Of a stretch of 64,000 nucleotides of DNA, positions 16,390-57,968 are shown one piece after another. Below the pieces are notes generated by a model. It saw only the letters and a program-made list of their open reading frames with translations. It searched no databases and was not told the DNA's origin. Each line of letters opens with the position of its first letter. Position 1 is the first letter of the stretch. Origin of the DNA: Haplodiscus bocki (taxonomy: Eukaryota); the NCBI GenBank assembly GCA_965655095.1, contig OZ296650.1, forward strand, positions 133,796,001 to 133,860,000, read 5' to 3'. Position numbers and translations under genes: made by a program.

Positions 16390-17071
16390 TGTCCTGGAAA
16401 GCTCCTCCATGTGTTAGTACTGAACCAAAAAAGTTCAACTTCTAATCAAAGAAAAGAAGTAAATGAAATAGAAGATGCGTTTAGTAAACTTCAGGGCCCA
16501 GAAAACTGTGAAATGACAGAAGTTTTTATTACAAACACTTTGCAACTTTCACAACTGTTCTCCATTTAAGTATGAACAACTCAAATTTGTTGAAAAAACA
16601 TTCCTTGGAAAAATAATTTTTTTATCATTTAACGTGCAACCACTAGTGCATTCAATCCCAACCAAAAACGATTGGACGCCTCTTCAATCCTCTATCGCCT
16701 TCATAAGGAACTAGCAGTTTAAACAACAATCAATTGAAGTTTTTAATCGAGAATGATCAAAAGGCTATGGATAAAAAGTGTTTCTGATGTAATATACATA
16801 CTGGCAATTCAAATAAAAAACAGTAAATGATTAATGCACAGAATGGTTTTCAAAGCTGAGAGAAGATAATAGGTTGCCGTGCAACCAAAGAAAACAATAG
16901 GTTTGCGGAAGTTTTTTGGAACTGCAAACATTTTGAAGAAATCAGCACGAAGTACACAATAAATACGAAGCGGATGGAAACTTTTCAAGAAAGGTTGCTG
17001 TGCAACCAAAAATTGACACCTATCAACAGAGTTAACATTCAGTGAAGAAGAAACGTTGACATTGATTGAGT

Positions 17072-20000
17072 TCAGTTTGTTCCGCCATATACAGACGTTT
17101 TCACAAGGCATTCGCACCGCAACGACCCCTCTACGTTAGTACAACGATACAAATCAATTAACACTTCGCATTCGCTCAGATAGTCAGCAAGTTTCAGTTG
17201 CACAACGTTTCTTTTTCTGCGAGACATCGCTTTCTGCCAGTCCACTTCGAATGAAGACAAAGAATTTCCGGTTACATCAGCGAAGCCATGCACATAAGCA
17301 ATTACTGTCCAGGGACGACGAGGTATGGGCTTTGTAAACTCACTTCCGTGCCCGGAATTGTGTTCATGAACACGCCGACGAAGGTTTTTGCAGCGACCGA
17401 CGTAAAACAAATGAGGCAACTTCAAACTCCTCAGCAAATAGCAGAAACCAAACGAAGTGTTAGGTATTTCGCTAAACCGCAAAGGAAACGGGCTTAATGT
17501 TTCTACAGAGCTCAGATTGCTTCCCATATCAGTGTAACTGTCCAGTAGGCTATTGATGAAAGGCAACAGATGGTTTTCCTTGACTAAAGTGTTGTCAATG
17601 CTTTTCATCGTGGCTAATCTGTCGCCCACGAAAGTAATATGACTGAGATCTCTGACACGACTAAGGAGGACGCACAGTTGTTCTTTGGCCCAAAACTTGA
17701 ACTTTCGGAAATCAGTTATTTGAGTTGCAATCATCGGGACAGTATCACCCATTACTTTGTGAACAGTAGATGCCACGTACATTTTTAAAGGAAACTGCCA
17801 TCGCCGGCAAACTGTGGAGGCGTTCAGCTTGAACAGGACACCCATTTGTCTCCTCAGTTTAACTTCTCGCCAATTCAATGAACTAACATTTGTAACTAGA
17901 GTAGATCTGAAACCTGGAGGAGCCACTTTAACTGTAATAGTGCCGCAGTATGTGTCAAAACTTTTTACAAAGCAAAGTTGTCCTTGCTGCAAATTTTCAG
18001 CTGGTAAATTACGGGTTAAGCGAAGCACGGCACCTTCGTGGACAAATAGTTGCTGGGGCTCCGTGCAAACACGGTTCAAGAAAAGAGAAGCTGTCACGTT
18101 AGCTGGAACCCAATTTTGAGTTCCAGAGGGAGTCATTTCGTCAACGGCAATGAAAGTTGTGTTCGAAACATTGCCACTACTTCGCACAGCCTCTATTCGT
18201 TCGTCAACTGCCTCCCGTTCAGCTAACCGAGTGCTAAAAACTCGTAAACAATGCATGGGAACTTCAGACCATGACCTCACAAAATTACAGTTCTGCTCGA
18301 TTATTGTTAACACTTCATTTCGGATAGTTTCAGTGGACGGATACGGGGCAATTAGGTCGAGGAGTCTTTGCCCGGCTATGTTGATCATTCGCACATACGA
18401 TTTTAGGTGATAAAAAGTGAAACACGTCAACACGGTGTTACTGCGGAGTAAGAAAGTACCGGAAGGAGGTGGTAACTGACGGAAATCTCCACTACAAACC
18501 AAAAATTTCCCACCAAAAGGAAGACTGTTCCCACAAACACATTGCAATACAGAATCCATGGAAGACCACAATTCGGCTGAAACCATTGACACCTCTTCTA
18601 TGAAAATAACATGAACTCTTTGTAAATACTTGCATTTAACTGGATCCCTGCACAATTTTTCTAGGGCATATGAAGTCATCTGGGAAACCGATGCGTTATC
18701 ATTTACGGGAAACGGAATGAGAGCATTTATGTGCAAACCACCAAAAATTGAAGCCCTCTCAGCCGCCAGACTGGTAACCACACAATTGAAACCTTTTGCT
18801 AGGGCTGCAGCTATACAGTGAATCAGAACATGACTTTTACCGGTTCCAGGTGGCCCAACAATCACTTGGTGCTTCACAAAAAATGAGGTACTCTTCTGAA
18901 ATGTATTCATTGTCTCCAGAATCAACTGCAGTATTCGACGTTGATCGGACACAGATTCAATTGTCTGAAGTGTTTCTTGGTATATTTGAGGCTGCCAATT
19001 CAAAGGACTGCTCAGAGAAGCCGACATGAATTCATTGAAGGAAGGGAAAGTTGTCGGGCTTTTCTCCATTAAGGCTGCTACTAAGTTACTTTTCAGTCTA
19101 TTGCTTTCTTCTAAAACTTGTTCCTCTGCTTTCTGGAAAATTGAGGACTCCAGAACAAGGGGTAAATCTTTGCAAAAGGTTAGAAGATTGTTTTGTGTAG
19201 CTTCCTTTAAACAGTGATACGCCGTTCCAACATGCCTGTCCAAGAGGGTTGACGAACCGGGGTAAAACCGCAGTTGCTCCATCACAAAACGCTTAGTCAA
19301 TGAAACAACTTCCTCATCGGTGGCTCTTTCAGTTGACGAAATCAGACCACTGTAGACGAATGCAGACTTCAAGGACAAATGGGAAAACAAATCAATTTCA
19401 GTGCTATACTCACCAAAGGAGAGAAGATAATGAATGAGAAAGTTTGATGTACTTTTAGGCACAATTGTTGATAAAACAACTTGCACTAGTGGAAAACTCA
19501 AACTCTCGTTTATGAAGTGGGACTTGTTTGGTTTTCGTAAACATTCAAGTGCTTCCCTTGCTTGCCGGACATAATGACTGTTGTTGCTTTGGAAATTCTC
19601 ACAGTAACTGATTAACGCTGTTAAATAATGCATGTTGACTGTAACTTTGAAACCAAAACCGTCAATCCAAAACGAACAGGAAATATCTGGTTTTATCATC
19701 GATTCAATGGACGCAGTTGGTGACACCTTGGTGCGGACGAACCAAGTGAAATATTTCTCTATAGTACGCAGGAACAAAAGTTCTGGAGGTCGTGCAGAAA
19801 AAGCTGTTATTTTGTCATAAGACACAGAACTTTTCTCAGCATCAACAATGGTCCATTCTTGTGTCTGTGTGAAAAGTCTATGAGAAGGGAGCTCAAGGTT
19901 TTTTCGCAGAAGAACTTGCTGACCATACAAAGGACCCTGCTTAGCAGGACGTATCATCCGCTCTTTCACAATACCAGCTCTTTTCTCTTTGGGAGTTGTC

Positions 20001-23000
20001 ACTACGTGAATGAAGTGAATGTTTGAACAAACATAAGGAAACTTCAGAAGCCACCACGCCGACTCTGTCAAGCTGATAGCCCTTCCAGTCAAAGTTTTAC
20101 GCTTTCGGCAAGAGCTTTGGTTCTTTGACCAGCGAACTCCGCTTATTTTTTCGTTTGACTGATCCTCAACGTTGTAGCCAAAAGTTGCATCAGTGGAACT
20201 ACTGTAAAGGTTTACGGTACTTCGTTCTTCTATTCCCGCAGCGTACTTGGCCAAATACCTTGCACTCATATAGACGTCACAAATCTGTAAATTTGTACTT
20301 GACCGAACCAAAGCGAAAATTAGGGCGTTCGTTGGCGAAAAATGGGTACCTTTCTCTGACGGATAATGATGTTTACCACCACGTAGCTCATCAATGAGAA
20401 ACAACTGACCGGTCACGGAATCTTCAAACGCAACATTCAGTTTTCGTAGAATATCCCATGTCTCTTTGGATAAATTTTTCTCGACTTCCTTGTAGGAAAA
20501 AGCGACACTGCTTGGATAAGCTGGAACTCTGCAAATTGACTTTTGTAATCTGTTCGATTTCTTGTGGCAACGCATTTTTGCTTTCCTGCAATTATGACTT
20601 TGGTATTTTTGAAACAAGATCTGCAAATCTTCTTTCTCCTCCGGTGAAAATTTTTCCGATCCCACTTCCGCGTTCAGATTACCTAAGAACGTTGATGAGC
20701 TACAACAAACTCTCGATCGAACTTTTTCGCTGAAAGCATTTTCTGAAGTCCAGATAAGAGCATGGATATGTGGGAAGGCACTTGTTTTATCTTGAAATTC
20801 ATAACGATACCACAACTTCCGTACTCTGCCTAACGGACGTTCCGTAGAAGTTTCGATGTACTTCATCACGAGTCGGGAACTGCGTTCCCACGCTCGTAGC
20901 ATTGTTATCATTTCAGCTTGAACCGCAGAATTTCGAACCTCCGAGCTGGTTATTGTTTCAGGGTATTTCTCTTCCAAAGCTTGAAAAATCTTCCGTACCC
21001 CAGGATGAGTAGACTGACTGCAAGTGTAAGTAAAAAAATAGGTTGCAGGTTCATCCTTCAATGCAGCACTAAGTTCATTGACATTTTTTCTTGAATCACT
21101 CTGATCGAAGTGCATAGCTCCTTCTTTGACGCATTGGCCACTTACGTTTTTGTCAGAATCTTGTCCCCAGCCTCTGTTCAACACCAATCTAGTGTCTTTT
21201 CCACGCAAATCTAAATTAAAAACCGAATCAAAAGCGTACTGGATGTATCTGGGATCGGATGCCGTTAACAGAGATCCATCTTTGACTCTTGTACGCAGCA
21301 TATCATCTAAGCTTGCAAAACCAACTTTGGCATTGCTATTCTTGTTGTTAAACAACGAAGCAGGTATAGCACCTGCGTAACTGCCGTCCTCATTCTGTTT
21401 CCAAAAAATAGTTGGGAACATCATCGCCTCTGGTTGAATTAGTGGTACCGAATTACACGGGCTGGTAGCTGTAACATTCTTCAACAGTCTTTTGTGTCTT
21501 GCAGTCACGTAAATGGGAGACCCTTTACTACGTTTCAGAAGGCCACACTGACCATTCAAAAGAATATGCAGAGGTAAATTGAAATTGGTGTCCGTCATTA
21601 CAGGTTCCCTGACATAGCTTGGTTCCAGTGCAGCATCCGTTGCTTCCGGTAATGTCAATTCCGAAGAGTCTGTGTGTTCATTCAACAATCCTGCATCCAT
21701 TAGGAAATCACTTTGAGACGTTGACGATGAAGAGACAGAGTTGCTCCACACACCTCCATCTGAAAGATTTTCCTCGCTGACACTCCTGCCGTAGCTACTG
21801 TCACCACTGATGCTCCTTGCAGCTTTGTCTCCATCGTTCTCAGACTTCGGCTCAGATTGGTTGTAACAGACAGAAGCGATGTCTTCTGAAGACGATGTGA
21901 ACGGCAACTTATCTGTTCGCCTCAAATTCGGAACATCCGCAAGATTGTCTTGCTGCATTACGTCTTTCCGACAAAGACAAGAGGTGCACTCGTTAACTGG
22001 ACATCGGAGAAACGAAACACGACCACATTCACAGTAATAACCGCTTCCAGGAAAATCTCTGGTTAAAGGCAGCAAATGTTCCTCACAAAGAAACTTCCCT
22101 TGTCCAGTGAGTGTTTGGAAATAATCAAGTTTCAATTGTTTGGTGGTTTGCGTTTGCACAAGGTAATAAATTGCGACATCCCAATGACCTTTAGTGTGAT
22201 GGTCGACGGCCTCCAACGGTGGAAGGTTAACACGACTAGCAAACGGTCTCTTGTTCTCGTAAAGCCAAAATTTATCAAAAGAACCTCCATGCCTCACAAG
22301 CGATATCCTGCTAATGTTATCTGTCAACTTCGAAATGCACCTCAACTCGTAGTCTCTATCGTCAACAGTTATGGCTATGGGTGGGCAACTTTTATTGCGC
22401 AAATTTTTTCCTGCTGGGCTTGTAACAATAACAGTTTGGGTCGAGCTTTGAAGTGAACTCTCAAAAGCAACAACCATTTTCGACTTGTCCTTCAAGGGAC
22501 AATGTGAAACTTCATCTAAAGCTGATGTCAAACTTTCCGCAAACATTACCGCGGGAAACTCACTGTGTGAATTGACTTCAAAAATTTTGGAAATTTCGGC
22601 CGTTAAATTGACGCTACCAGTCCAATCCTTCCGACCAGAAAAAACAACAGGTTCCAAAAATTTCAAAATGGGAACAAGATTGGGAGTGGACATACAAGCT
22701 GACGACAATTGATCGCAAAGAGGTGGAGAGATGCAAAACGCTGTCTGTAAAAGAAACATCAGTTCAGAAGTTCTACAACTGATCTTAGGAGGAAGGGCGC
22801 CAAAGAAATTGTTACCATGGGCGAAAGCCAAAGATTTGAATTTAGCGCAAAGAGAGTTCTCCAGAGACACACCCAATGATGACATCAGAGATGAAGAAGA
22901 CTTCAAAGAGACACTTGTTGTGGAGAGCAAAGATTGCACAGCTAATCTCTCGTTGGGACGAGACAAAGTCTGCTGTCGAATTTCTTGAGATATTTCCTTG

Positions 23001-25252
23001 GAATCAACCAAGTTTTGTAGTAACACTTGTATATCTGGTCTGAAAAAAGAACACTGCGCCTCCGCTTTAACCAACAACTCCGACGTGAGCATCCAATTTC
23101 GCTTGGACGTTAATGATATACTGCTTATTCCAGAATAGTTACCAACAGCCTTGAGCAATTGGTATGTATGGCTCGAATAATTAGCCTTGACGTTTTTTAT
23201 GAGGCGCAAAGTTGGCATAATTAAAGCTAACCTGTCTTCACAAGGCACGCTCAATCTTCCCAGTTGGGGATGTGTAGGTGGATGTAAAAACTGCAAATTT
23301 GAACCATTGTGGTGATCAAGACAAGTGCCAATAACAAGACCCTTGGAACAGTGTACGAAAGCGAAAGCAGAAACTTTGAATTTTTCCAGAACATTGAAGG
23401 GGGTGCTCCAATCTGATCTTATTCCACGAAAATGACAGTTGAAAGACGACTTGAAGGACACAAAACTGGGCATCAGTCCATTGATGAGATGATGAAACGG
23501 AATGAAGCCAGTTTCCTCAACGAAAGTGAAACAACCGAAGGGACATCGACAATTGGGATAGGCTTCTTGATCCAGTGCTTTTTCCAACCGTTCAGAAGAT
23601 CCCGAATCAATATGAGCATCGAAAATTGACCTTCTCTGTGTGGTGTCGGACACCAACGAAGGAACATTTTGTTTACGTATGGATGGATGTAGATGATTGA
23701 AACGATGCTTTCAACTTTGCCTTATCTCCGAAGGAATCATTGCATACAGAATTTTCACCTCATCATCCGAAAGTGAAGTGTCATGAATGAGGCTACTTAA
23801 AACGGTGGGCCAAGCGTCCTTCCAAGCGGCTGTGCTGCACTGCAAATATCGCAGACAAAATTGGCAAACTTTTTGACCAACACGACAATTGCGCCCAAAT
23901 TTTTTCTTCCGCCCGCCAACATTTTCCAAAACAAAGAAAAACAATTCGTAATACTTCGTCGATCTTCGCAAACAATTGGCACATTCTAGGTCCCCAACAA
24001 CAATCTGTGAATCACTATGAGAAGTGGTGTGGGAAAAAGCAACCGCTTCACAAGAGTCTACTGTGACTTCTGCTGATTCATTGAGTTGTGGTGAATTCTG
24101 CCGAAAAGTGGTCGTTGCAACAAATGAGGGAATGAAGTTAGATAACGCTGGCAGCGGTAAAGTTTCGAAATGTGCAGACGAGCTCCTGTTGTGTTTTTCC
24201 ACTTCATGATTACTCAAATTTTGCCTTTTTGCAAAACTTGAAATTACGTCGAAATGATTTCCTGAAATACTGTGACGAACAAAAATCGACGGAATATCCA
24301 AAGCATTTCGGTCACCTTGATACTCATAAACAAACCACGAAGAGGTCATAGTGTGATAAACCACAACATCAACTCGAGCCAGCTGTGCAAATGTGAAAAG
24401 TTCAACGCACGTTCCAAATACACCATCCGTACCCATGCGAGACACTTCCAAATAACTGTTGACATTCCGACAAGAAATTGCTCTGACACCTGGCCCTCCA
24501 GGAACATAAGCTTCCAAAAATTGGCTTTGTAAGCCAACACTGGGTAAATGGTAGCAAATAGCAGCCCGTATGAAAGCATGGTTTGTTGCATGCGAACCGA
24601 TAGCTACAGAAAGTGCAGAAAAAAGGCAATTTCCGTCTCCTGGAACATCAACACAACTTCCAGGAACCAAATCTGACAACGGATGTTCATCAATCAAAGT
24701 CGTTGGGAGAAACAAACCTTGAAAACTGACTCCCAGCTTATTGCAAACATGCTGTAGACTATGCTGACTTCCAATGATTTTTCTACCCTTCGAAATTACC
24801 GAATACAAATTTGCTTCCAACAATGGATCAGCATCTGATGACAGCGGAGTTAATGTAACATTCGAAATATTCGCCAATTTTGGACTTTTCAAACACTTGC
24901 ATTCCCCTTTCCCTTTGAAACAACCGCACCACACACACTGCTCAGTCACATTGGCACGTCGCCTCTTCGTACCTGGGCCAGGGTTCAATTCCAATCCTCC
25001 ACGAAAAAGAGCTAACACAATAAGACGTCTAGTTAAGCTTGAATCGTTGCCACCACAAAATTGAAGTTGTCCTTGAACGCAACACGCCGATTGACCACTG
25101 CGGTAATTTCGTTTCTCAATGCAGAAACCACCGAATAACGACACCGTGTAATTATGTGTCTGAGACAACGTTTGCAAACTTTTGTCACTTGAGAAAATTG
25201 ATGTTGAACACCAAAAAAACAAAAGCATTGTTAAACAACCGTAAAAATCCAT
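17072..25252 (-). pseudogene. RepHel polyprotein of unit B (leader + 2A-like - OTU - Rep - Pif1-like - GIY-YIG), interrupted by one in-frame TGA at 23711-23713
   Basis: ORFs 23711-25252 and 17072-23656 share a frame; the TGA replaces a Trp conserved in A, C and D. Motifs: GDGNCLF/NHFD, YEFQDKTSAFPHIH, YLAKY, GPPGTGKS, IEEVSM, FCYLL..YVG..RRRVHEHN. Confidence 0.85.
24974..25000 (-). other. 2A-like (StopGo) motif GGLELNPGP
   Basis: Preceded by hydrophobic LIVLALFR and followed by basic TKRRR. Positionally conserved with SGIETNPGP in unit D. The canonical Asp is replaced by Gly. Confidence 0.6.
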
Positions 25253-31637: not shown

Positions 31638-34600
31638 ATGAAGCGTCGCCGTTGTACTTCTTGTGGACAATTTGCTGTTGCAAGCCATGTTTGCCTGAAG
31701 GACATTGATCGAGAACTGCAATCTGACAAGCCGCTGGGCATCTTATACAAAATTCCCGACATTTCAATCTCCGTTTCACCAGTTGCACGAAGTGAAACTC
31801 TGAACTGTCTCTCAACTTTAGGTCTAACTGATTTTTTAGTCTCTCTAGACGTTTCGATCGCAAATGACAGTATCATTTATAATTTGCGTCCGGCGCGTGT
31901 AACTGCGATTCTTGGCGATGGTAATTGCCTTTTCTCATCCTTAGCAGTTGCTCTCGGTTTGTCACAGGATTGTAGTTCAATTCTACGGAATATAATTGTT
32001 AGCAACATGATGTTCATCAACTTCCCTCCAAACAGCTTACAAACCACAATTTACTCCGCTGATTTTCCAAACCAATACCGTGTTTTGCTTTGTACTTCGA
32101 TTCAAGAGTACCTCAGTTTGTCGAAAATGGAAGAAAATGGAGTCTTCGGAACATGCGTTGAAATATACGCGTTTTGTCAGATTTTCCAAATGGACGTATA
32201 TTTATATCATGTTCCTCTGAAATCCTGGTTGGTTTATGAATGCTCTCTGAGCACGAATCGTCGTGGAATTTTCATTCAGCAAACCTGGAATGCAAATCAC
32301 TTTGAAGTAATCAGTGAGTTGGTTTCAGTCGCAAATGAAGAAAACGCTGCAGGTTCACAAAGAATTTCCTGTCTTGGTTCCAACGCAATGCATTTCTCTT
32401 CGTCAGTTTTGGGAGAGGCTATTGAATCTTTCAGGTACCCAGAAAACACAACAGGGGTCCCACCAGCGAAAAAAGCAAAACACACTGCGGATCCATCCAC
32501 CTCGAAGACATGCCTTGAAACTCACGTCACACACATTCCAAGTCAGAACTCCTGTAACGCAAAGTCAGATCAAAATTTTCCGATGCTACCGTTGTCAGAA
32601 AACGCTACCAACTCTGTTCTGAGCAGAGAAATACCCAAAATCGAGGATCTGTACACTAACACTGCTACGGTTTCACACAGTGATGCAACAATTGAACAAA
32701 CGACAGATGGTAATTCTAAGTCTGCTGACGGAGAGTTTTGCGGCAAATGCTTGCGACAATCCACGCTGCAATATCCGTTAAAGCTTACTAAGACAGAAAA
32801 GTCAGATTTTATAAACAGAATGTTTGGTAACCGAATCAAGGACGCTTTTCCCATATTATGCAGTCAATGTCTACTTTACTGTACTTCCGAACGCATCGAG
32901 TGGAGTCACGCATGGCCATCTGTTTTTTTTCACGCTTTTGAGTGATGAAAAAATGCCCAAGGAGCAGCAGTTGAATGTTTTAACGTTGTTATCTTGGGAA
33001 CTGAGACAGCAATGGATGGGATGCTTGGAAAAATTTACTCCATGTGTCCAACAGTTTCTCAATGCAAAAGAAATCAATGGGAAATGTGTCGTTGACGGAA
33101 CCGCTCGTTTGCATTATTTCCAGAAACTGATCAAAACTCTTCAACAAGAACAAATAGCAGTAGCTTTGGATAAAGAACCTTACCCGAACGTTCGGTGCCC
33201 ATTTGGTTGCTGGTGTTTCATTGAAGAATCCGGTTTAATCAATGCTAAACACTTTTTGAATCTATTCGACCCAGCGTTTACGTCTTTTGGAGCTTCTAGT
33301 CATTTGCATCTTAGAGGAATTAGGTCAGATTTCTTGGTTCCAACGTCATCGTTGCGGAAGTTTTTAATTGCAACAACTGTGCGTGTAGACAAAGTAGAAG
33401 GATTGGTTGTTCACGCTTGCCTTATGCACTCAAAGGGGTCGTCTGTGCAATACCTTCATCCTCCATCACATCCTGTCCTGTCAAGAACTGCGTTAATTCA
33501 CGATGAGCGTTTGAGTATGGTGGCACCAACAATTTCGTGGATAACAAATATTAAAGCAAATTTCGCCAGTCATACCTACCAGTTATTGAAAAGTGTTGGT
33601 TCTTATAGTGGAATGAGTACAGTTCAGTTGCGGCGGAGAACGCGTTGGGACATCACCAGCGATATCTTGTACCACGCTGAAGGCCTCGCGTGCCGTTTTC
33701 GGGAAGATGTTAAAACGAAGATTTGTGAATGGGTGAAAGAAGGTAAAATCGTTGAAGATGTAGCTTTGGGGATTCTTGACTATCCTGCACAGATTGAAAA
33801 CATATCAGAGTGTTTGTTGCCTGCCCTTTCTACAGATTTGGAGACTTGTGTAGAAATAGCTAAAGTTCTAGATAAAAATGATAAAGACTATTTAAACAAC
33901 GTGGAAGCTTTGAGTTGTTATTCCTTCGCCCACGGAACCGGCGAGTATGGTTGTTCGCCCCCTCCTCTGAATTGTAAAGGCAGCAATGTTTTTTGGCTGG
34001 TACAAGCTGCACTGTGTCTGTCACCGTTGATGTGTTGTTCTTTAGTAACATCAGGTAAGTATTCTGTGACCTTGAGGCCTTTGATATCTTCGCTGAGGAA
34101 TGTTTTTATTACCTCAAAGGCAATGAAGAAAGCCAGCAATACGCTACTTCTACGGCGCTCGGAAAAAGCAATAAACACCTTGCTAGAGAAAAACCGAACT
34201 GAAGAGCAGTTAAAAGGTGTGAAGTACTGTTGTTGCCATCTCGCCGCACAGTTTTTGGCAACCGTGTCAGAGAATTTTTGCCACATCCCCTTAACGAATC
34301 GAAAAAATATAACTTGTTATACAAATCTGCAACTTCCCGTTGAAACAACTCACGCTATATTCACCACCAACTCCCCCAATAATTTGCGGAGCAAAAGCGA
34401 ACCTCCGCTAAAGTTGGTTATCAGCGATATCGGCTATGAACTGATTGCAGTCGGAGCAAAGGATGGAGGCCCGGCCGCCGAGCCAAGGTTGATGGTTCGA
34501 CATGGAGGTGACTTCCAGAAGTTCTGGCTTTTGGAGAAAAACTGCAGATACGCTAAGAAGATGACAGAGTCTAGAACTGAGGCTTTGAGTTCAGGTCTTC

Positions 34601-49682: not shown

Positions 49683-52600
49683 CTAAAAATTCTGCATGCA
49701 ATCACATTCCAGGGCTGTTTCGATACCTGTAACTTTATACAAATCCATAAGAACATGGCATTCTGACAAGTAATCTGCAAGCGTTAGCATCACATTCGAA
49801 TATTTGTGATTAACCATTGCTCTTTGCCAATCCTGTTCGGAAGAATAACGGCTTCGCGAAACAGCGTTAGAAAACCCCGTCACGTAAGCAACTAAAGCCC
49901 AGGGTCTTCTTTCAACAGGCTTTGTGAATGCGCTCCCATTTCCCGAATTATGCTCCTGCAACCGTCGCCGCAACCTCCTACAGCTTCCAATGTAAAAAAG
50001 TTCCCTGCGTTTAACGCTCACCAACAAATAACAGTAACCAATTGCCGAAAGGGGTACATCAAAAACACGTAAGGGAAAGGGATAAAATGTCTGGATCGCT
50101 GAAACACCGGAATTACAACTGCCACGAGACGACAAAAAGTTATCTATCAAAGGTACCAAATGGCTATCTTTGCGGCAAAGAAGATTAATTGCATCAAGTG
50201 TACGCTGCTTGTCACCGACAAACGTTATATGGGAAAGATCAGTGACCCGACTAACAACTACATAAAGCTGCTCTTTCAGCCAGTAGGAAAATTTTTTACC
50301 ACCAACAATCTGTGTTGCCAAGCTTGGAACAGTGTCACCCATTATTTTGTGAACCGTTGACGCCACATACATTTTCAAAGGAAACTGAACACGTCTGCAA
50401 ACGGTAGAATTGCTATACTTATGGAGAACGCCAATTCTTTTACGAACAACTACAAGTCTCCAGGAATTAACGTCCGGGTTGTTAGATGACACAGACCTTA
50501 CTCCGGCTGGTGCAACTCTCACAACAATATGAGGATCATTTTCATCGAACGATTCAACTAAACACAATTGTCCCTGGAACAGTTTCAGCGATGGCAAATT
50601 GCAAGTTAAGCGCAATACACACCCAACATGTATAAACAAAGACTCTGGCTCAAGGCAACTTCGGTTGAGGAACTTGCTGACGGGTGCTGTTGCGGTAACC
50701 CAATTCTGGGTTCCTGTATTTGACATTTCATCCTTGCAATGGAAAGACACACTCTGTATGTTTTGATGTGTTGTCACAAACGATATTCTCTCTTCCACGA
50801 CCTCTTTTTCCGCAACTCGCGTACTGAACACTCTCAAAATATCCAGAGGGACTTCCGTCCACGTGCTTACAAAAATACAGAACTTGTCAATGATCTCACA
50901 ACACTCCTTAATACATGCTTCTGTCACAGGATATTCAGACAGCAAATCCAGAAGTCTCTTTCCTTGCTGGTTCTGCATCCTCACATAGTGCTTCAAATAC
51001 CGAACCTCGAAATTAGCTAACACCGAGTTGCTCAGCAAAAGGAACGTTCCCGTAGGAGGCGGAAGTTGACGAAAATCACCTGTGCAAATAACAATCTTTC
51101 CTCCAAAAGGAAGATTGTTTTCAGACACGGCTTGCAACACATTGTCCATTGCGGACCAAAGTTCAGCTGAAATCATTGAGACTTCCTCGACAAATAAAAC
51201 ATCCAACCTCTCCAAAAAAGTAAATTTTAGAGGATCTCGGGCAAGAGTGTTCAATGCATGCGAAACTAGATGAGTCACCGTTCCATTTTGAACGACAGGG
51301 AAAGGGATTAAAGCGTTTATGTGTCTTCCGCCGAAAAGTGAAGCTCTCTCCGCAGCGACACTAGTTATGACGCATCTCAATCCCCTAGCTAGAGCCGCGA
51401 TCACACAATGGATCAACACATGGCTCTTTCCTGTACCTGGTGGACCAACTATGAACTGATGTTTAATAAAGGCAGTCGTACAAGAACAATAATTATCGTA
51501 CAAAGAACAAACGTAATCCAAAATATTCTGTTGATCATGCAATGATTCGTCAGTCTGGTTGCGCGCTTTATGTATCTTCTGGCTCCAAGTAAAAGGACGT
51601 GCTAAGGTGGCGTTCATCAATTCTGCATACGTTGGTAAACCAACATAACCCCCATTGGCAATGGCACACAGAAGACTCTCTTTCTGCGCATTTAATTCGT
51701 GTGAAATATTGCTGTCACTCTGCTGCACAATACTCTGTTCTAAGACGCGCGGTGTTGAGCACGGAAAAACGACCGAATTATTTTGTGCTGCTTGCTGGAT
51801 GCACAAATAGGCACTCGTAACAAATCGATCTAGTAAAGTAGATGATCCTGGATAATAGCGTAATTGTTCAAGCACAAAGCGCCGAACAACATCAATAACT
51901 TCGGAATCTTCGCATCCCAAATGAGACCTCGCTAAAGAAGCCTCAAAGAACGCAGATTTCATATTAGATTGAGAAAAAATGTTAAGTTCGGTTACGTATT
52001 CTCCAAGAGACAACAGAATGTGGGTCAAAAAATTGGTTGTGTTCCTCGGAACAACGTTCGATAAAACTACTTGAGTTTGACAAACCTTTTTGTCATAAAT
52101 GAACTTGTGACTTGAACTGCTCGTTGTACATGCAATGGCTTCATGACATTGCCTGGAGAAACGACGGACCCCACTAGAAAAGTTGCGACAGTAGTTGAAA
52201 AAAGCTTCTTTGTACAAAGCATTAAGGTATATGCAATAGCCGAGGCCATCCACCCAATATGATTTGGTTACATTTCTCTTTAGTAAACTTTCTGGTGTCA
52301 ACTTTGAGGGCTTTCGGAAGCGGCAGAACCAAGTAAAATAGTTTTCCACTTTGAGCACAAAAGTTAGTTCAGGGGGTCGTACACCAAAAACTGTTATCTT
52401 GTCTGGAGAAAGAGAACTTTTTTCTGCATCAATTATCAGCAGCTTCTGATTAACCGTGAAGCAACGGTGAGGAGGAAAGTCCTTGCTGTGTCTAATGGAA
52501 CTCTGGCGCCCAAAAAGAGGACCCTGATTGCTACTAGAAAGCCTGCATTTCGGTTCAATGACTATTCCAGCCCGTTTCTCTCGCGGGGCAGTGACAACAT

Positions 52601-55600
52601 GAATGAATTGTATATTGGTCACCACGTAAGGAAATCGCAATGACCACCACACGGATTCCGTTAAACTCAAAATGCGAGAGTTCAAACACTTTTTCTTTGG
52701 CTTTTCCTCCTTGCTCATATTGGTCAAGTATACCCCAGCGATTTTGTTGTTCACTTGTTGATCAACATGGAAGTCATACAAATCTGTTGCACTTGACGTA
52801 GAAATAGAAACTTCGGCGCGTTCCTCCACGCCTGCAACATATTTTGACAGATAACGGCTACTCATGTAAATGTCGCAAATTTGTAGATTGGTGCTAGATC
52901 GGACGAGGGCAAAAATTTTGGCGTTTGTTGGAGAAGTGTGCGTGTTACTTTCTGTTGGATAATGATGCTTGCCACCACAAAGGCGCTGATCAATGGTGAC
53001 AGAACAATCAAAGTCACTCGACTCAGCTAATCCGATGTTCTTCAAAACTGCTATCGTTTCCTCAGACAGTTCTTTGTGAATACATTTGTAGGTAAAATTA
53101 GCAGAAGGAGGGTATTTGGGCACGCGGCACGTTTTTCTTTTCAATTTGTCAGTTTTTTTCTGACAACGAAATTTAGCTTTAAAACAGCTGTGTGATTGGT
53201 AACGGTTGAACAGATCTCGTAACTCGTTCAACTCATCCAAACTATAATTGTGCGAACCAACTTCAGTCAATAAATTCCCCAGAAACGTTGTTGCCGAGCA
53301 ACAAATTCTAGACCTTACTGCTTCACTAAAGCAATCTTCTGCCGTCCAAATCAAAGCATGTACATGAGGGAACCCACAAGCTTCATCTTGAAACTCATAC
53401 CGATACCAAATCTTTTTAACCTTTCCCAATGGCTGCTCGGGTGACGTTTCAATGTACTTCATGACAAGACGAGAAGCTCGTTCCCACGCTCTCAACATGG
53501 TGACCATTTCAGATTGAATCGCTGATTTTCGGACCTCCTCTTTACAGACGTCTTTCGGAAACTTTGCGTCCAACGCACTAAAAATCTTCCTCAAGCCAGG
53601 ATGCGTTGACTGCCCACAAGTGTAAGTGGAAAAATATGTAGCTGGTCGTTCTTTCAAAGCTGCTCCCAATTCATTGACATTCTTCCGAGAATCGCATTGA
53701 TCAAAAAAAATTGCCCCTTCTCGCATGGCATGTACATTTTTTCGTTGCCGAGCGGCTTCACTCCAACCTCTGTTCAATACTATTCTGGTGTCATTGACAC
53801 GCAGCTGTAGGTTAAATATTGTGTCAAATACGTATTGGACGTAACGAGGATCCGTTGACGTCAACAGAGACGAATCTTTCAAGCGCGTTTGTAAATGTTG
53901 TTCTAAGCTAGCGAAGCCGAGCAATTCGTTTTGTTTGTGATCATTATACAAAGGAGACGGTATTGCACCCGAATAACTGCCGTCTGTATTTTGGTGCCAA
54001 AAGATGGACGGAAACAACATGGCTTCCGGCTGAAGCAAAGGGACAGAATTAGGGGGCGACGTTGCAGTGATATTCTCCAGAAATCTCTTATGTCTAGCTG
54101 CAACATACAACGGAGACCCTTTACTCCTTTTCAGTAAACCGCATTGACCATTCAATAAAACATGTAGTGGGAGCTGAAAATCAGTGCTGTCTATTCGGAA
54201 ATCACGTTCCAAAACAACAGTTGAATCTCCAGCAGCAGTTGTAACAGGCAGCGAAACATGCGATCCCTCAGAATCTTCCTCTAAAAGGCCAGGGTTGGTA
54301 ACAAATTCCGAGGACGCGACAGTGTTGGTAGGCGATGTGGACCGATTCTCTGAATCGACAGAAACACGGCTATAGCTACAATCATCTAACTGACTTGAGC
54401 CGCACGCTGAGTTTTTTGTGGACTCACCAAAGATCCTTTTTTTACCATCAAAAACAAAGTGCTTTTCCTGACTTTCATCTTCAGAATGCATCCTGCAAAC
54501 ACTTGCCAAACAACCAGACACTGGACAACGTAAAAAAGAACTTCTACCACATGAGCATTTGAAACCACTTGAAGGAAAATCACGGGTGAGTAACAGAGAA
54601 TGCTTTTTACAAAAGAATTTTCCTTGACCTGCCAGTGTTTCAAAATATTTCGACCGCAACTCACTAATATCGGCAAAGGTCTGTCGATAGTAAACACAGA
54701 TATTCCAATAGTCATTAATAAAATGATCAACCGCTCTATCACAAGGCAGCCTCACCTGTTCAGGAAAAATACTTTTGCTTTTATACACCCAAAAACTTTG
54801 AAAGACACCACCATGCCTCAAAAGAATGTTATTACGAGTCGCTAAACCTTCAGTAGCAATAAATTTCAACTCGAAAACGGACTGAGCAGTTTGGAAGTTC
54901 AGAGGAGCTTTGAATTTAGAACGCAAAGTATTTACTCCCGCGTATGAAAAAAGTATGACATTTACACCTTCAAATTCTTGAGCTTCCAAAAAATGCCAAA
55001 TATCTTGACGGCTTGCCACGTTTTCATGGATGACATCATCACAAAATTGTGACACACCGAAACTGAGACAACGAGATGGACTTTCCGGAAATCTTGTAAA
55101 CAACTTCGACAATCCATCACTCATAGACGCATCCACAGTTTTTCTTGTGCAGCGACGGAACCTTGGAAAAATTACAGGGTCCAAAAATTGCAGCAAAGGA
55201 AAAATCGCATTATCACCACCAGCTGAATCAGATATGGATCGACACAGTTGAGGAGAGATGCAAAATAAAGTTTGCAACAACGACAAAAAGTGAGTCTTGC
55301 AGCTCAAAATTTTTGGAGGAGAGGAACCAAACGAATTCGGAGGCTGAGCGAACGTCACAGACTTGAATTTTGCGCATAAGCGTTGTCCATCAGTCAATCC
55401 AGGAGAACTGAATAAACGATACGTATCCGTTATAGACACACTTGTTGATGCGGAAAGAGAAGCAGCCGACTGTTCAATGTTCGGTTTACTTTGAATGCCT
55501 TGTCGGATTTCATCAGTTGTTTCGCCAGAGGACACTAAATTATTCAAAAAATATTGAATATCGCTTCGGTAAAAACTACATTGAGATTCCGCCTTCACTA

Positions 55601-57968
55601 ACAGATCCGAAGTAATATCCCAACGGCGTTGAGAGCTCAAGCGAATGCTACTAATGCCTGAATAATTACCGACAGCTTTCAGCAACTGGAAAGTGTGACT
55701 AGCGTAATTCGCTTTGGCATTCTTCAAAATACGCAAATTTGGAGCAACAAATGCTAATCTGTCGTTGGTAGGAACACTGAGACGTCCCAGAGACGGGTGT
55801 GCAGGCGGGTGAAGATACTGCAGGTGAGACCCATTGTTATGCTGCACACAAGTTCCGATAACAAGGCCATATGCCCCATTAACACTGACAAAGCCGGAAA
55901 CATCAAACGCATCCAAAACTTTCATTGGTTTCAACCAATCGTCTCTTGCACCTCGCAAATGGTACATAATCAGAGCTGAACGATGTGAATGAAGGCAAAA
56001 TCCCATTTACAAGGTGGTTGAAACCGATTCGATCTGTTTCTTCAACAAATGTGAAACAACCGAAGGGACATCTACAATTTGGATAACATTCATTATCTAA
56101 GGCTTCCTCCAAATCAGTGAAATTACCCGAATTTATTTTGTCCAGAAAAACTTCCTTCCGTTTTGTTATATCAACTAGAACAGATGGATCACCCATAGAA
56201 ACAGCAGGATGCAGATGTTGACACATAGCCCAACTGTCGCGTATTTCGGGAGGTAAAAAAGAAACAAATTTTTTCATAGTACAATCTCGAATGCTGAGAT
56301 CCTTCAGTAACGAATGAATCACGGAAGGCCAAGCGTACCGCCTACAATTTCCGCCATTATTGTAATTGAAACAACTTTGGCAGACCAGACAGGTAGCAGT
56401 AGGTCGCAAACCAAATCTCCTTCGTTTGATTGCTGTTTTTTCAAGAGTTTGCCATTGCAAAGGATAAGCAGGAGTTGAAATTCGACAACATTTACCGCAC
56501 ATTTCTCTGTTTTGTGCTTTGTCGGCTGAAAAAGTGGACGTCAAAACACAATTGTCACTCGAGGCATCCTCATTACGACAGGCGTTATCTTTCTTCATAA
56601 TCATTGTGGCTGTGCCATTGTGTGCGGATTGCGTGGATTGAATCTCCTGAGGCAGGGCATTGAAGCAAACACCTGGGCTCAACGGGTCACACTTAGAACC
56701 ATTTTCTTCACATTCAATTGTCGCTAGGCTTAAACAACTGTTGCTGGGCAACAAAAGGTCGTTGTGCATACCGCCCAATCCAACAGAGGGTGATGTGAGG
56801 CCTTCATCGCACAAATGAGGCAAAACTTTAAATTCAGAACACGCACTACCTTTTGGATCAGAAGTGTTCGCATGAAATGACATTGCATTGTGATGCCGTA
56901 TCTGGGAATGAACTCTGGACGCAACCATGAGGCAAACTTTGCTGTGAATTTGGATTTTCTGCCGACAACACTGCTACCGTTTCAAAATGGTTACCTGTAT
57001 GAGTATGTACCAGGAAGACAGATGGAACGTCCATTGAAGCACGATCTCCGGCATAGCTATAAACTATCCACAATTTTGTCATGCAATGGTAAACGTAAAC
57101 ATCAGCCACCGCAATTTGGGCGAAAGCATAGATCTCTACACAAGTGCCATACACACCATTCGATCTCATTCCGGAACGATTCAAATATTCGTTCACGTTT
57201 GAAGCTGTCTCTACCACAACATTTCCATCAATGGTTGTGTAAATTTCCAGAAAATGCGGAGCAATATCTACGGAGGGTAAAGCCAAACAAATACGCTGGC
57301 GTAGTTGTGAATGATACCAATATTGTGACCCAATTGACACCGCTAAAGCAGAGAACAAACAATTACCGTCACCTGGAACAGGATGAGTTTGTGATGGATG
57401 CAAACTGTTCAAAGATTTGGCACCCAACAAGTGTGTGTTCAATGGTTTTGCCACAAACGGTATTCCAAACACAATGCAAATTCTCGTCAAATTAGCGATT
57501 GTGCATGAAAAAGCTGTTGAATTCGGCACGTTCGAGAAAAGACTCATGGTATTGAATGGCGCAGAAAACAGCGACCGATCAAAATAGTCTTCACCAACTG
57601 AGGCTTTTACCATGGATGATTGGAAACAGGAGCAGTCTTTGCTGCCATAAAAACACCCACATGTTACGCATTTCCTGGGCTCTCTGCACAATTTCTTTTT
57701 TTTTTGGCGGGCCAGGGTTGGTTTCTATACCACTTCTCAACAGAAACAAAAGTAACATTCTGCGAGTCATCGAAACCTCATCAGAATTGCCGATCCTCAT
57801 AAACTGCAAGTGATCCTGAAGACACAAAGAGACACAAAATTCCCCAACGGTGACGTCTGAGCTGAAGACTTCTCCGACATTGTTCACATAAACAATTCCA
57901 TCTTTTTCCAAAACTGTCCATAAAGAAGACCAAATCATCAACAAAGTTAAACAAAGTGAGTAAACCAT
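49683..57968 (-). pseudogene. RepHel polyprotein of unit D, broken by three frame changes (A10 run 57696-57705, ~56900, ~55965)
   Basis: ORFs 57591-58013, 56858-57691, 55903-56928 and 49683-56006 are successive pieces colinear with B. Motifs: SGIETNPGP, GDGNCLF/NHFE, YEFQDEACGFPHVH, YLSKY, GPPGTGKS, VEEVSM, YCYLL..YIGS..RRRLQEHN. Confidence 0.85.
57708..57734 (-). other. 2A-like (StopGo) motif SGIETNPGP
   Basis: Context TRRMLLLFLLRSGIETNPGPPKKK; homologous to the unit B motif. Confidence 0.62.

What the first reader, a model, noticed from the sequence alone, without database searches (positions are those of the whole stretch)
24950..25252. Signal-like leader + 2A-like motif + basic NLS at the N-terminus of a DNA transposase (units B and D)
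Seen: B reads MDFYGCLTMLLFFWCS...LQF...SLTRRLIVLALFRGGLELNPGP-GTKRRR. D (57968 onward) reads MVYSLCLTLLMIWSS...LQF...SMTRRMLLLFLLRSGIETNPGP-PKKK. NPGP is kept although most of the ~90 aa leader has diverged; unit C shows no such motif upstream of its KRRR. Established: D(V/I)ExNPG|P causes ribosomal StopGo in viruses and some non-LTR retrotransposons. Inference: skipping would release a small secreted or membrane peptide and a nuclear transposase beginning Pro-NLS. The Asp>Gly change may reduce or tune activity.
Basis: partly seen in the sequence, partly recalled or inferred. Interest (0 to 1): 0.72.

Follow-up and report, generated by a model that had tools for sequence, protein, structure and literature searches.

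The report
StopGo leader on Helitron-like transposon polyprotein
Two families of rolling-circle (Helitron-like) DNA transposons in this genome start their giant protein with a short hydrophobic leader that ends in a conserved ribosome "StopGo/2A" motif, so the working enzyme probably starts at a proline next to its nuclear-import signal; this trick was known for RNA viruses and retrotransposons, but I found no report of it for this transposon class.

Summary
Units B and D each encode an 86-92 aa leader that ends in GLELNPGP (B) or GIETNPGP (D), followed by a basic cluster and a CxxCGxF finger. These are the only two NPGP in the six-frame window; 0.0004 eight-residue core matches are expected by chance.

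The host protein is not a cut-and-paste transposase. It is a Helitron-like polyprotein of 2720-2780 aa (OTU, Rep, PIF1 helicase, GIY-YIG), intact in sister copies with the leader in frame.

Every copy that still has a long open frame keeps NPGP; two decayed copies lost it. Relatives about 33% identical, from two other assemblies, keep the block TRRxxxLxLLR(S/G)(G/C)(I/L/V)ExNPGP plus a basic cluster. The leaderless clade (A, C, P0002) starts with Met exactly at that basic cluster.

Gly or Cys at the "Asp" position is an established functional StopGo class, not a defect. In a published reporter screen, four of the seven closest natural peptides skip.

My best reading (0.6) is a working StopGo site that detaches the leader, tunes the dose of the enzyme, or both. 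The signal-peptide role of the leader is unproven. No RNA data or assay exists.

This is a new host context for a known mechanism. I found no paper that links Helitrons and 2A.

The parts
24977..25252 (-). Unit B leader, aa 1-92, from Met1 to the Gly of NPG (the predicted released peptide).
   Evidence: ORF listing. NPGP position. The leader is in frame with a 2720-aa ORF in the intact sister copy L031:754-8916. The AlphaFold model gives pLDDT below 50 for residues 1-117, with no confident packing onto the OTU domain.
25190..25246 (-). Unit B N-terminal hydrophobic segment (aa 3-21, FYGCLTMLLFFWCSTSIFS), signal-like.
   Evidence: Kyte-Doolittle 19-residue maximum of 1.45-1.69. Predicted helix at residues 2-16. 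Conserved in B, D and P0001 (T8 and L10 invariant).
24974..25033 (-). Unit B StopGo module, aa 74-93, TRRLIVLALFRGGLELNPG|P. Predicted break between Gly92 (24977-24979) and Pro93 (24974-24976).
   Evidence: T74, R75, R76, L80, L82, R84, E88 and N90-P93 are invariant among B, D and P0001. Predicted helix at 75-89.
24956..24973 (-). Unit B basic cluster GTKRRR (NLS-like), directly after the StopGo proline.
   Evidence: The basic cluster is kept in every relative and forms the N-terminus of the leaderless families.
24893..24937 (-). Unit B Cys finger CxxCGxFxGxxxCxC (aa 106-120).
   Evidence: C106, C109, G110, F112, C118 and C120 are invariant.
24266..24643 (-). Unit B OTU-like cysteine protease domain (aa 204-329).
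   Evidence: Pfam PF02338, weak here (E 0.008) and clearer in the distant relative L036 (E 1.4e-7). The GDGNCLF catalytic motif is invariant. The AlphaFold core at residues 150-345 has pLDDT 60-88.
17072..23656 (-). Unit B remainder of the polyprotein: Rep (Helitron_like_N), PIF1 helicase and GIY-YIG nuclease.
   Evidence: Pfam: PF14214 at 9.6e-8, PF05970 at 7.9e-14, PF01541 at 2.1e-7. It is separated from the first 513 aa by a stop. The intact copy L031 is continuous.
57711..57968 (-). Unit D leader, aa 1-86, from the conserved Met (MVYS) to the Gly of NPG.
   Evidence: The leader is in frame with a 2780-aa ORF in the intact copy L032:742-9084.
57708..57767 (-). Unit D StopGo module, aa 68-87, TRRMLLLFLLRSGIETNPG|P. 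It fits the expanded core (D/G/C/N)(V/I)ExNPGP exactly.
   Evidence: Identical in all 20 D-type copies examined across 5 subfamilies. Core definition from PMC12846837.
57696..57705 (-). A10 run after NPGP-P in window copy D. It has one A too many, which shifts the frame between the leader and the PKKKK-finger.
   Evidence: A9 in 22 copies, A10 in 2 copies and A8 in 1 copy. 1-nt indel relative to the intact L032.
49683..57691 (-). Unit D remainder of the polyprotein (finger, OTU, Rep, helicase, GIY-YIG), in three frame pieces.
   Evidence: ORFs. 99.76% identical to the intact L032, with 1-, 11- and 2-nt indels.
31638..31700 (+). Unit C leaderless start, M-KRRRCTSCGQF. This is the comparison point: the Met sits where the B and D products would begin after StopGo.
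   Evidence: Stops in all frames upstream. Same arrangement in the sister copy L044.

Best explanation
The leader ends in a genuine StopGo (2A-like) recoding site of the 'Gly at p12, Leu-rich upstream helix' class, placed at the N-terminus of a Helitron-like rolling-circle transposon polyprotein. Translation must start at the leader's Met, because there is no other ATG before the OTU domain. The proposed mechanism is as follows. When the ribosome has Gly in the P site and Pro in the A site, the nascent ...LLR(S/G)G(I/L)ExNPG chain, held in the exit tunnel, is released without a stop codon. Translation then resumes at Pro. One ORF therefore yields an 86-92 aa hydrophobic leader peptide and the 2,630-2,690 aa enzyme, which begins Pro + basic NLS + Cys finger + OTU + Rep + PIF1 helicase + GIY-YIG. 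This is the same N-terminus that leaderless sister families make directly with Met. The likely purpose is to free the nuclear enzyme from a hydrophobic N-terminus and/or to set how much enzyme is made per mRNA, since failed or 'fall-off' events lower the downstream yield. Shown here: the motif, its frame, its conservation and its position relative to the leaderless starts. Inferred: the separation itself, and any role for the leader peptide.
For: (1) Motif. D-type GIETNPGP fits the expanded core (D/G/C/N)(V/I)ExNPGP. The upstream L-rich tract ends in SG or GG at p12, which matches 'motif 5' of PMC12846837. 0.0004 core matches are expected per window and 2 are seen.
(2) Frame. The leader is continuous with ORFs of 2720 and 2780 aa in intact copies. 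There is no Met between NPGP and the OTU domain.
(3) Conservation. All 8 B-type and 20 D-type copies with a recognisable open leader keep NPGP. The decayed copies L008 and L010 read NLGP and NPGF with stops. Relatives about 33% identical keep E, N, P, G, P, the L-rich tract and the basic cluster, while the rest of the leader diverges. These are P0001 (GCIEANPGP), P0009 (GIESNPGP), P0007 (GLESNPGP), and P0010 and P0011 (GVEINPGP, GVEWNPGP), from two other assemblies. P0001's best match in this genome is only 38% identical. On a RepHel tree, B pairs with P0001 and D pairs with P0009 (supports 99/100 and 96/94). The motif has therefore survived several deep splits.
(4) The p12 residues seen here (G and C) are exactly the variants reported as functional.
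(5) Positional logic. The leaderless clade (A, C, P0002; support 100/100) starts with Met right at the basic cluster.
(6) Assays on near-identical natural peptides in preprint 10.64898/2026.06.17.732966. SRAIIEILLLRSGIEKNPGP, LRRIVLMLLLLSGIEQNPGP, AVLFIGLLLLRGGIEPNPGP and DKCIVHILLLRSGVESNPGP were classed as skipping.
(7) AlphaFold gives no confident packing of residues 1-117 onto the OTU core and predicts a helix at 75-89.
(8) The same genome carries a canonical LLVSGDIETNPGP + PHD-type fragment, so 2A-like sites are also present elsewhere in this genome.
Against: There is no direct assay and no RNA runs for this organism, so even expression is unshown. In the same screen three close analogues did not skip: CYLCHRALLLRSGIEPNPGP and CDVIRSLLLLAGGIETNPGP were non-skipping, and FACVIAMLLIISGIETNPGP was fall-off only. 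Activity is therefore context-dependent. B-type and P0007 have Leu at p13, outside the V/I rule. Only a p12=D peptide with p13=L was seen to skip. Within-family dN/dS of the leader (0.4-0.8) does not differ from that of the next 500 codons (0.5-0.7), and the counts are too small to be significant. An N-terminal signal sequence upstream of 2A can inhibit separation in some constructs; I know this only from the title of de Felipe et al. 2010, cited.
Confidence: 0.6

Rival explanations
1. The site works mainly as a translational brake (stall or 'fall-off') that limits how much transposase is made. The leader peptide has no function of its own, and separation is incidental.
For: Most retrotransposon-associated 2A-like peptides lowered protein abundance in the screen (59-70%). 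The one Helitron-like protein in that data set (Acropora millepora XP_044182051.1, N-terminal NDVEENPGP, fold labels PIF1 helicase and tegument-like DUB) was classed 'fall-off'. The distant relatives P0010 and P0011 have only a 24-25 aa leader, which is the 2A helix and nothing else. Most of the leader's N-part is poorly conserved.
Against: B, D and P0001 share a conserved hydrophobic N-terminus and a C-x-Q...F patch in the leader, which hints at a function for the peptide. Four close analogues gave true skipping. This rival overlaps with the best explanation rather than excluding it.
Confidence: 0.17
2. No recoding occurs. The leader stays attached as an N-terminal membrane anchor or regulatory extension of the polyprotein, and NPGP is conserved for a structural reason such as a turn before the NLS.
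For: Three of seven close natural analogues failed to skip in a heterologous reporter. B-type has a non-canonical Leu at p13. The hydrophobic N-terminus could tether the protein.
Against: The conserved positions are exactly the StopGo-critical ones (E at p14, N-P-G-P, an L-rich helix, G or C at p12) across lineages about 33% identical, while the neighbouring residues vary. A nuclear DNA enzyme tethered by a hydrophobic N-terminus directly next to its NLS makes little sense. Leaderless sister families work without any such extension. AlphaFold shows no packing of the leader on the enzyme.
Confidence: 0.18
3. Chance resemblance or an annotation artefact: the leader is 5' UTR or an unrelated upstream ORF and is never translated with the enzyme.
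For: Both window copies are broken, and in copy D the leader is out of frame with the rest.
Against: Intact copies have one continuous ORF of 2720-2780 aa. There is no alternative ATG before the OTU domain. 0.0004 chance matches are expected. The motif recurs in at least six lineages from three assemblies. The frame break in copy D is a 1-nt change in an A9 run that is seen in only 3 of 25 copies.
Confidence: 0.04

Closest known systems
2A-like/StopGo sites in the N-terminal region of ORF2p of APE-type non-LTR retrotransposons (L1Tc, Ingi, CR1, Crack, L2; Odon et al. 2013, PMC3708506)
   Same: A transposable element's single long ORF begins with a short N-terminal stretch that ends in an L-rich tract + xExNPGP, followed by a zinc-finger-type module and then the enzymes. 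Related elements without the 2A have a different 5' arrangement. A non-LTR-like hit, P0013 (hydrophobic N-terminus, LLRSGDIETNPGP, basic stretch, PHD finger), even aligns with the Helitron leader profile at E 9.5e-4.
   Different: The host element here is a class II rolling-circle DNA transposon (Rep + PIF1 helicase), not a retrotransposon. p12 is Gly or Cys in all six Helitron lineages seen, where the usual non-LTR form is GD. The alignment shows this as a one-residue gap.
Viral StopGo with p12 = G and a Leu-rich upstream motif ending (A/G/S)G ('motif 5'), and the GxExNPGP site of duck hepatitis A virus 2A1 (PMC12846837, PMC6249498)
   Same: The core and upstream signature are the same. D-type GIETNPGP and P0001 CIEANPGP fit the expanded core (D/G/C/N)(V/I)ExNPGP.
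   Different: Those sites lie inside RNA-virus polyproteins, between functional proteins. This one is in a cellular-genome DNA transposon, 86-92 aa from the start. B-type has Leu at p13.
N-terminal 2A-like signal sequences of sea-urchin NOD-like receptor proteins (Roulston et al. 2016, PMC4981915)
   Same: A hydrophobic N-terminal sequence combined with StopGo. The proposed outcome is two fates: a separated cytosolic or nuclear product, or an unseparated product sent to the secretory pathway. The relatives P0010 and P0011 have a comparable arrangement, with the 2A inside the first 25 residues.
   Different: In B and D the hydrophobic N-terminus (aa 2-20) and the 2A helix (aa 68-93) are separate segments about 50 residues apart. 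Signal function is untested here, and the n-region lacks basic residues.
Helitron-like elements of group HLE2 (Helitron2/Helentron) with an OTU domain upstream of RepHel, and a reported GIY-YIG capture in one plant family (HELIANO paper, PMC11417382)
   Same: OTU lies upstream of Rep + PIF1 helicase, and a nuclease domain is fused.
   Different: These units have no AP-endonuclease domain; GIY-YIG sits at the C-terminus instead. That paper describes no N-terminal leader or 2A-type motif for any HLE. I did not examine termini or target sites.
Acropora millepora XP_044182051.1 in Table S7 of preprint 10.64898/2026.06.17.732966
   Same: An N-terminal 2A-like peptide (aa 42-62, NDVEENPGP) precedes a deubiquitinase-type domain and a PIF1 helicase, so this is very probably a Helitron-like polyprotein. 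It was tested and classed 'fall-off'.
   Different: It has a canonical p12 = D and a tegument-like DUB rather than OTU. The paper's text never mentions Helitrons. I did not test it for sequence homology to the leader studied here.

Membership tests
StopGo / 2A-like recoding peptides | C-terminal core (D/G/C/N)(V/I)ExNPG|P | tested here: met
   D-type GIETNPGP, P0009 GIESNPGP, P0001 CIEANPGP, and P0010 and P0011 GVE(I/W)NPGP fit exactly. B-type GLELNPGP and P0007 GLESNPGP differ only by Leu at p13. Core definition from PMC12846837.
StopGo / 2A-like recoding peptides | Suitable upstream tract of about 10 or more residues, here Leu-rich and helix-prone, ending (A/G/S)G at p12 | tested here: met
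   The tracts are RRMLLLFLLRSG and RRLIVLALFRGG. L80, L82 and R84 are invariant. AlphaFold predicts a helix at residues 75-89. The description of motif 5 is.
StopGo / 2A-like recoding peptides | The site lies inside one continuous ORF, with coding sequence continuing in frame from the Pro | tested here: met
   ORFs of 2720 aa (L031) and 2780 aa (L032), plus several further copies of 2761-2780 aa.
StopGo / 2A-like recoding peptides | Core residues held by selection while the flanks diverge | tested here: met
   E, N, P, G and P are invariant in 8 sequences with a mean column identity of 33%. The motif is lost only in decayed copies. Within-family dN/dS is uninformative.
StopGo / 2A-like recoding peptides | Co-translational separation into two products, abolished by changing NPGP | not testable with these tools
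   No assay was possible. Surrogate from preprint 10.64898/2026.06.17.732966: 4 of the 7 closest natural p12=G Leu-rich peptides skip, 2 do not and 1 is fall-off only.
Helitron-like elements (rolling-circle transposons, HLE2 type) | Rep (HUH-type, Helitron_like_N) fused to a PIF1-family helicase in one protein | tested here: met
   PF14214 and PF05970 hit in units A and B, in P0009 and in the L036 gene; both families are also on record for P0001.
Helitron-like elements (rolling-circle transposons, HLE2 type) | Characteristic termini and target site (short terminal inverted repeats, TT insertion, subterminal hairpin) | not tested
   Outside the scope of this finding. Element ends were not mapped.
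Helentron (HLE2 with AP endonuclease) | Apurinic/apyrimidinic endonuclease (Exo_endo_phos) domain | tested here: not met
   Pfam gives no such hit in units A and B, in P0009 or in the L036 gene. GIY-YIG sits at the C-terminus instead in all but the L036 gene.
Cleavable N-terminal signal peptide | Basic n-region, hydrophobic h-region of 7-15 residues, polar c-region with small residues at -3 and -1 | tested here: inconclusive
   An h-region is present (11-residue Kyte-Doolittle maximum 2.0-2.4 within residues 2-16). The n-region has no Lys or Arg (MD, MV, MN). Several weak -3/-1 candidates exist. No trained predictor was available. P0009 has a weaker N-terminus, and P0010 and P0011 have none.
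2A-like signal sequences with dual targeting (sea-urchin NLR type) | The 2A-like sequence itself lies at the extreme N-terminus and acts as the signal sequence | tested here: not met
   In B and D the 2A module is at aa 68-93, behind a separate hydrophobic segment. Only the distant relatives P0010 and P0011 have the 2A within the first 25 residues. Targeting itself cannot be tested here.

The most novel reading that the evidence does not exclude
Helitron-like transposons use an N-terminal StopGo site as a dual-fate switch. When separation succeeds, a small hydrophobic leader peptide goes to the ER or a membrane, and a Pro-NLS RepHel enzyme goes to the nucleus. When separation fails, the whole enzyme is dragged to the secretory or degradative pathway. 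The efficiency of ribosomal skipping would then set the transposition rate. The leader-plus-2A cassette would be a mobile module shared between non-LTR retrotransposons and rolling-circle DNA transposons.
Probability: 0.2. Interest if true: 0.78.

Novelty: new member of a known kind. Interest (0 to 1): 0.58.

Why it matters
StopGo/2A recoding is regarded as a device of RNA viruses that is rare in cellular genomes. Among mobile elements it has been described for non-LTR retrotransposons, with one LTR case. Finding it conserved over deep divergence at the start of Helitron-like DNA transposon polyproteins extends the mechanism to class II elements. Leaderless sister families start exactly at the predicted break, which makes a natural with-and-without comparison for asking what an N-terminal 2A does for a transposon: dose control, removal of a targeting leader, or creation of a Pro N-terminus. 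It also supplies new natural p12 = G/C, Leu-rich StopGo sequences from a non-viral source for the groups now mapping sequence rules. Finally, it warns annotators that these 2,700-aa ORFs probably yield two products.

Tried and rejected
- A word-indexed protein search restricted to leader residues 1-140 of the 2720-aa protein found nothing. Only the exhaustive profile search found relatives, 11 in all.
- A protein-atlas feature search of the D leader gave only scores of 0.82 or less to unrelated plant clusters, which is uninformative.
- Within-family dN/dS (Nei-Gojobori, 8 pairs) could not separate the leader or the 2A module from the downstream coding sequence. There were too few substitutions.
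- RNA evidence: the run search returned four runs, none on record as RNA, all from one study. I therefore did not use read laying, and expression and transcript starts remain unknown.
- I looked for relics of a leader upstream of three leaderless families (L039, L040, L043, L044). There are none, only stops in all frames.
- Pfam found nothing in the accessory ORFs between the polyprotein genes or in P0012.
- I considered and rejected that the Gly is a recent inactivating Asp>Gly change. Gly or Cys is present in all six Helitron lineages, and the alignment to a canonical site shows a one-residue gap, not a substitution.
- I considered that the frame break in window copy D might be programmed. 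I rejected this because 22 of 25 copies have the in-frame A9 run.
- Literature searches for Helitron with 2A-like, NPGP, 2A peptide or ribosomal skipping, and for DNA transposon with 2A-like, returned nothing relevant.
Full report
**What is there**

The window is G000:C3:133796001-133860000 of a 1.5-Gb eukaryotic assembly. It holds four large units: A and C on the plus strand, B and D on the minus strand.

Pfam shows that each unit encodes one giant protein. It carries a weak OTU cysteine-protease match, Helitron_like_N (Rep), PIF1 helicase and a C-terminal GIY-YIG nuclease (the same set in relatives). These are Helitron-like rolling-circle transposons, not cut-and-paste transposases.

- In B, the ORF 23711..25252 (-) starts MDFYGCLTMLLFFWCS and reaches ...LTRRLIVLALFRGGLELNPGP-GTKRRR.
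- In D, the stretch from 57968 (-) starts MVYSLCLTLLMIWSS and reaches ...MTRRMLLLFLLRSGIETNPGP-PKKK.
- These are the only two NPGP in the six-frame translation. From the window's own six-frame composition, 0.34 NPGP and 0.0004 matches to [DGCN][VIL]ExNPGP are expected.

**The leader belongs to the polyprotein**

Both window copies are slightly damaged.
- B is 98.8% identical to an intact copy and differs by in-frame indels only, so a nonsense substitution is inferred.
- D is 99.76% identical to an intact copy and carries 1-, 11- and 2-nt indels.

A search of the whole genome with the leader found 46 matches. Several have uninterrupted frames of 2722, 2761, 2771 and 2780 aa that begin with the leader. 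I fetched two of them: L031:754-8916 (2720 aa, B-type) and L032:742-9084 (2780 aa, D-type).

Downstream of NPGP there is no Met until well inside the OTU domain. The finger and OTU parts can therefore only be made by starting at the leader's Met.

**Conservation**

- All 8 B-type and all 20 D-type copies with a recognisable open leader keep NPGP.
- Two decayed B-type copies read NLGP, and NPGF with stops.
- Across five D subfamilies the first ~65 leader residues carry many substitutions, but the 28 residues VSMTRRMLLLFLLRSGIETNPGPPKKKK are identical.
- Pairwise dN/dS is 0.4-0.8 for the leader and 0.5-0.7 for the next 500 codons. The leader evolves like coding sequence, but the counts are too small to say more.

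The deeper comparison is the informative one. A search with residues 96-560 found P0001 (2729 aa, ENA assembly ERZ25074608, 34% identical). Its N-terminus reads MNLHISITALMIFWCATPIV...LTRRFIILSLLRGCIEANPGP-GKKRK...CTFCGRF. Its best match in this genome is only 38% identical, so it is not a copy from this genome.

An exhaustive profile search of 1.84 billion representative proteins added the following:
- P0009: 2811 aa, with the same Pfam domains, ...FLLRSGIESNPGP-PKKRR.
- P0007: ...LLLRSGLESNPGP-RKQKR, followed by the OTU motif.
- P0010 and P0011: the whole leader is 24-25 aa (MHPTQLKKSMLLKLFVGGVEINPGP-AQKSRKRK...CVVCGRF). In assembly ERZ25071359, P0010 sits just upstream of an OTU-Rep-PIF1 gene, apparently across short GT-AG introns.

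In the 8-sequence alignment the mean column identity is 33%. The invariant columns are one Leu of the L-rich tract, E, N, P, G, P, one Gly of the Cys finger and one of its Cys. Among B, D and P0001, the residues T-R-R, L80, L82 and R84 are also fixed.

**Phylogeny and the leaderless families**

On a RepHel tree, B groups with P0001 (99/100) and D groups with P0009 (96/94). A, C and P0002 form a separate clade (100/100) that has no leader.

The leaderless proteins begin as follows, with stops in all frames upstream and no relic of a leader:
- M-KRRRCTSCGQF
- MSKQNNKGNLKRRRC
- MPSGKSDFKRRRC
- for P0002, a different short N-terminus before RKRKHSKKC

The Met of the leaderless families thus sits where the Pro of the predicted post-StopGo product sits in the leader-bearing families. 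This is the strongest sequence-level argument that the mature enzyme is meant to start at the basic cluster.

**Comparison with what is known about StopGo**

The recent literature says otherwise.
- In 131,941 representative viral ORFs, p12 = G is as frequent as p12 = D (1,207 against 908 octapeptides).
- p12 = C occurs 85 times, and a natural example was over 95% active.
- The core was therefore widened to (D/G/C/N)(V/I)ExNPGP.
- One upstream class ('motif 5') is Leu-rich and ends (A/G/S)G with the G at p12 (PMC12846837).
- Duck hepatitis A virus 2A1 works through GxExNPGP (PMC6249498).

The Helitron leaders fit this class, and their two p12 residues (G and C) are exactly the validated ones. 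Aligned to a canonical non-LTR-type site (P0013, LLRSGDIETNPGP + PHD finger), they differ by a one-residue gap, not a substitution.

A high-throughput reporter screen of eukaryotic 2A-like peptides (preprint 10.64898/2026.06.17.732966) contains very close natural analogues:

| Peptide | Class in the screen |
|---|---|
| SRAIIEILLLRSGIEKNPGP | skipping |
| LRRIVLMLLLLSGIEQNPGP | skipping |
| AVLFIGLLLLRGGIEPNPGP | skipping |
| DKCIVHILLLRSGVESNPGP | skipping |
| CYLCHRALLLRSGIEPNPGP | non-skipping |
| CDVIRSLLLLAGGIETNPGP | non-skipping |
| FACVIAMLLIISGIETNPGP | fall-off only |

Activity in this class is therefore common but context-dependent. Leu at p13, as in B-type, was seen to skip only with p12 = D.

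**The leader itself**

- Residues 2-20 are hydrophobic (Kyte-Doolittle 1.45-1.75 over 19 residues).
- There is no basic n-region and no clear cleavage site.
- This segment is conserved in B, D and P0001, weaker in P0009, and absent in P0010 and P0011.
- An AlphaFold model of residues 1-420, built on a 9-sequence alignment, gives a confident OTU core (residues ~150-345, pLDDT 60-88).
- The same model gives pLDDT below 50 for residues 1-117, with two isolated helices (2-16 and 75-89) that do not pack on the enzyme.

This is compatible with a detachable leader, but it does not show what the leader does. 'Signal-like' is a fair description. 'Secreted or membrane peptide' remains a guess.

**Most likely mechanism**

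1. Translation starts at the leader's Met.
2. With Gly in the P site and Pro in the A site, the nascent Leu-rich helix plus G(I/L)ExNPG in the exit tunnel triggers release of the 86-92 aa leader without a stop codon.
3. Elongation resumes at Pro. The product begins Pro-NLS-finger-OTU-Rep-helicase-GIY-YIG.

I put 0.6 on a functional StopGo site. A related reading is that the site mainly acts as a brake on enzyme yield. Three observations favour it: many retrotransposon 2A-likes lower protein abundance, the one Helitron-like entry in the screen was 'fall-off', and some relatives have only a 24-aa leader. That reading gets 0.17 and overlaps with the first. No recoding, with the leader staying fused, gets 0.18. 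An artefact gets 0.04.

**Novelty**

Full-text searches combining Helitron with 2A-like, NPGP, 2A peptide or ribosomal skipping, and DNA transposon with 2A-like, gave no relevant paper.
- The HELIANO survey of Helitron-like elements lists OTU, RPA, endonuclease and a GIY-YIG capture, but no N-terminal recoding motif.
- The screen's text discusses non-LTR and one LTR element, NLRs, RapGEF and others, but never Helitrons.
- Its Table S7 does hold one unremarked row: Acropora millepora XP_044182051.1, with a 2A-like peptide at aa 42-62 ahead of a tegument-like DUB and PIF1 helicase.

I therefore class this as a new member of a known kind: a known mechanism and a known motif class, in an undescribed host element type.

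**Limits**

- No RNA runs exist for this organism in the index, so expression is untested.
- No signal-peptide predictor was available.
- The element termini were not mapped.
- The earlier scan note on a GIY-YIG nuclease at the RepHel C-terminus (s1-359405) agrees with my Pfam result for units A and B.

Noticed in passing
window 57696-57705 (-); L041, L042 and 22 other D-type copies: The codons after NPGP-P run into a homopolymer. It is A9 in 22 copies (in frame), A10 in window copy D and L042, and A8 in L041. In L041 and L042 this single change separates a 140-aa leader ORF from an otherwise open 2684-2701 aa frame. It could be real slippage or a homopolymer assembly error.
   Followed up: partly
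G000:C3 133.76-134.30 Mb (includes the window), also C4 ~47.95-48.06 Mb and C9: D-type units recur at about 15-kb spacing on the same strand (for example leader matches at 133760089, 133774976, 133789981, 133853690, 133868686, 133883613 and 133898607). These are tandem arrays of whole Helitron-like units, including their accessory ORFs.
   Followed up: no
window 10379-11389 (+), 13750-14748 (-), 15703-16410 (-), 40560-41351 (+), 45789-46781 (-), 47688-48341 (-), 60746-61738 (-), 62682-63335 (-): Recurrent accessory ORFs of about 330 aa and about 217-263 aa lie between the polyprotein genes. A 229-aa gene follows P0001 in the other assembly (L034). None has a Pfam match.
   Followed up: partly
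L038 (G000:C1:16185396-16185545, -): The same genome holds an 81-aa open fragment with a canonical LLVSGDIETNPGP followed by a basic stretch and a PHD-like Cys/His pattern. This is the arrangement described for non-LTR retrotransposon ORFs, so canonical 2A-like sites are also present in this genome.
   Followed up: partly
L036 10001-10700 (ENA ERZ25071359): A very distant OTU-Rep-PIF1 element has its 24-aa 2A leader, NLS and finger on a first exon that appears to be separated from the rest by short GT-AG introns. The elements in this window are intronless.
   Followed up: partly
P0012 residues 150-240 (898 aa, source not looked up): This protein carries two 2A-like sites about 60 residues apart (LLVGVELNPGP and TRRMILLQLLRSGVEPNPGP). 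It has no Pfam domain. The second site shares the TRRM..LL.LLRSG signature of the Helitron leaders.
   Followed up: no
L007 (G000:C11:34651314-34651733, -): This B-type copy has a 2576-aa open frame in which the leader's Met1 is changed to Thr, while NPGP is intact.
   Followed up: no
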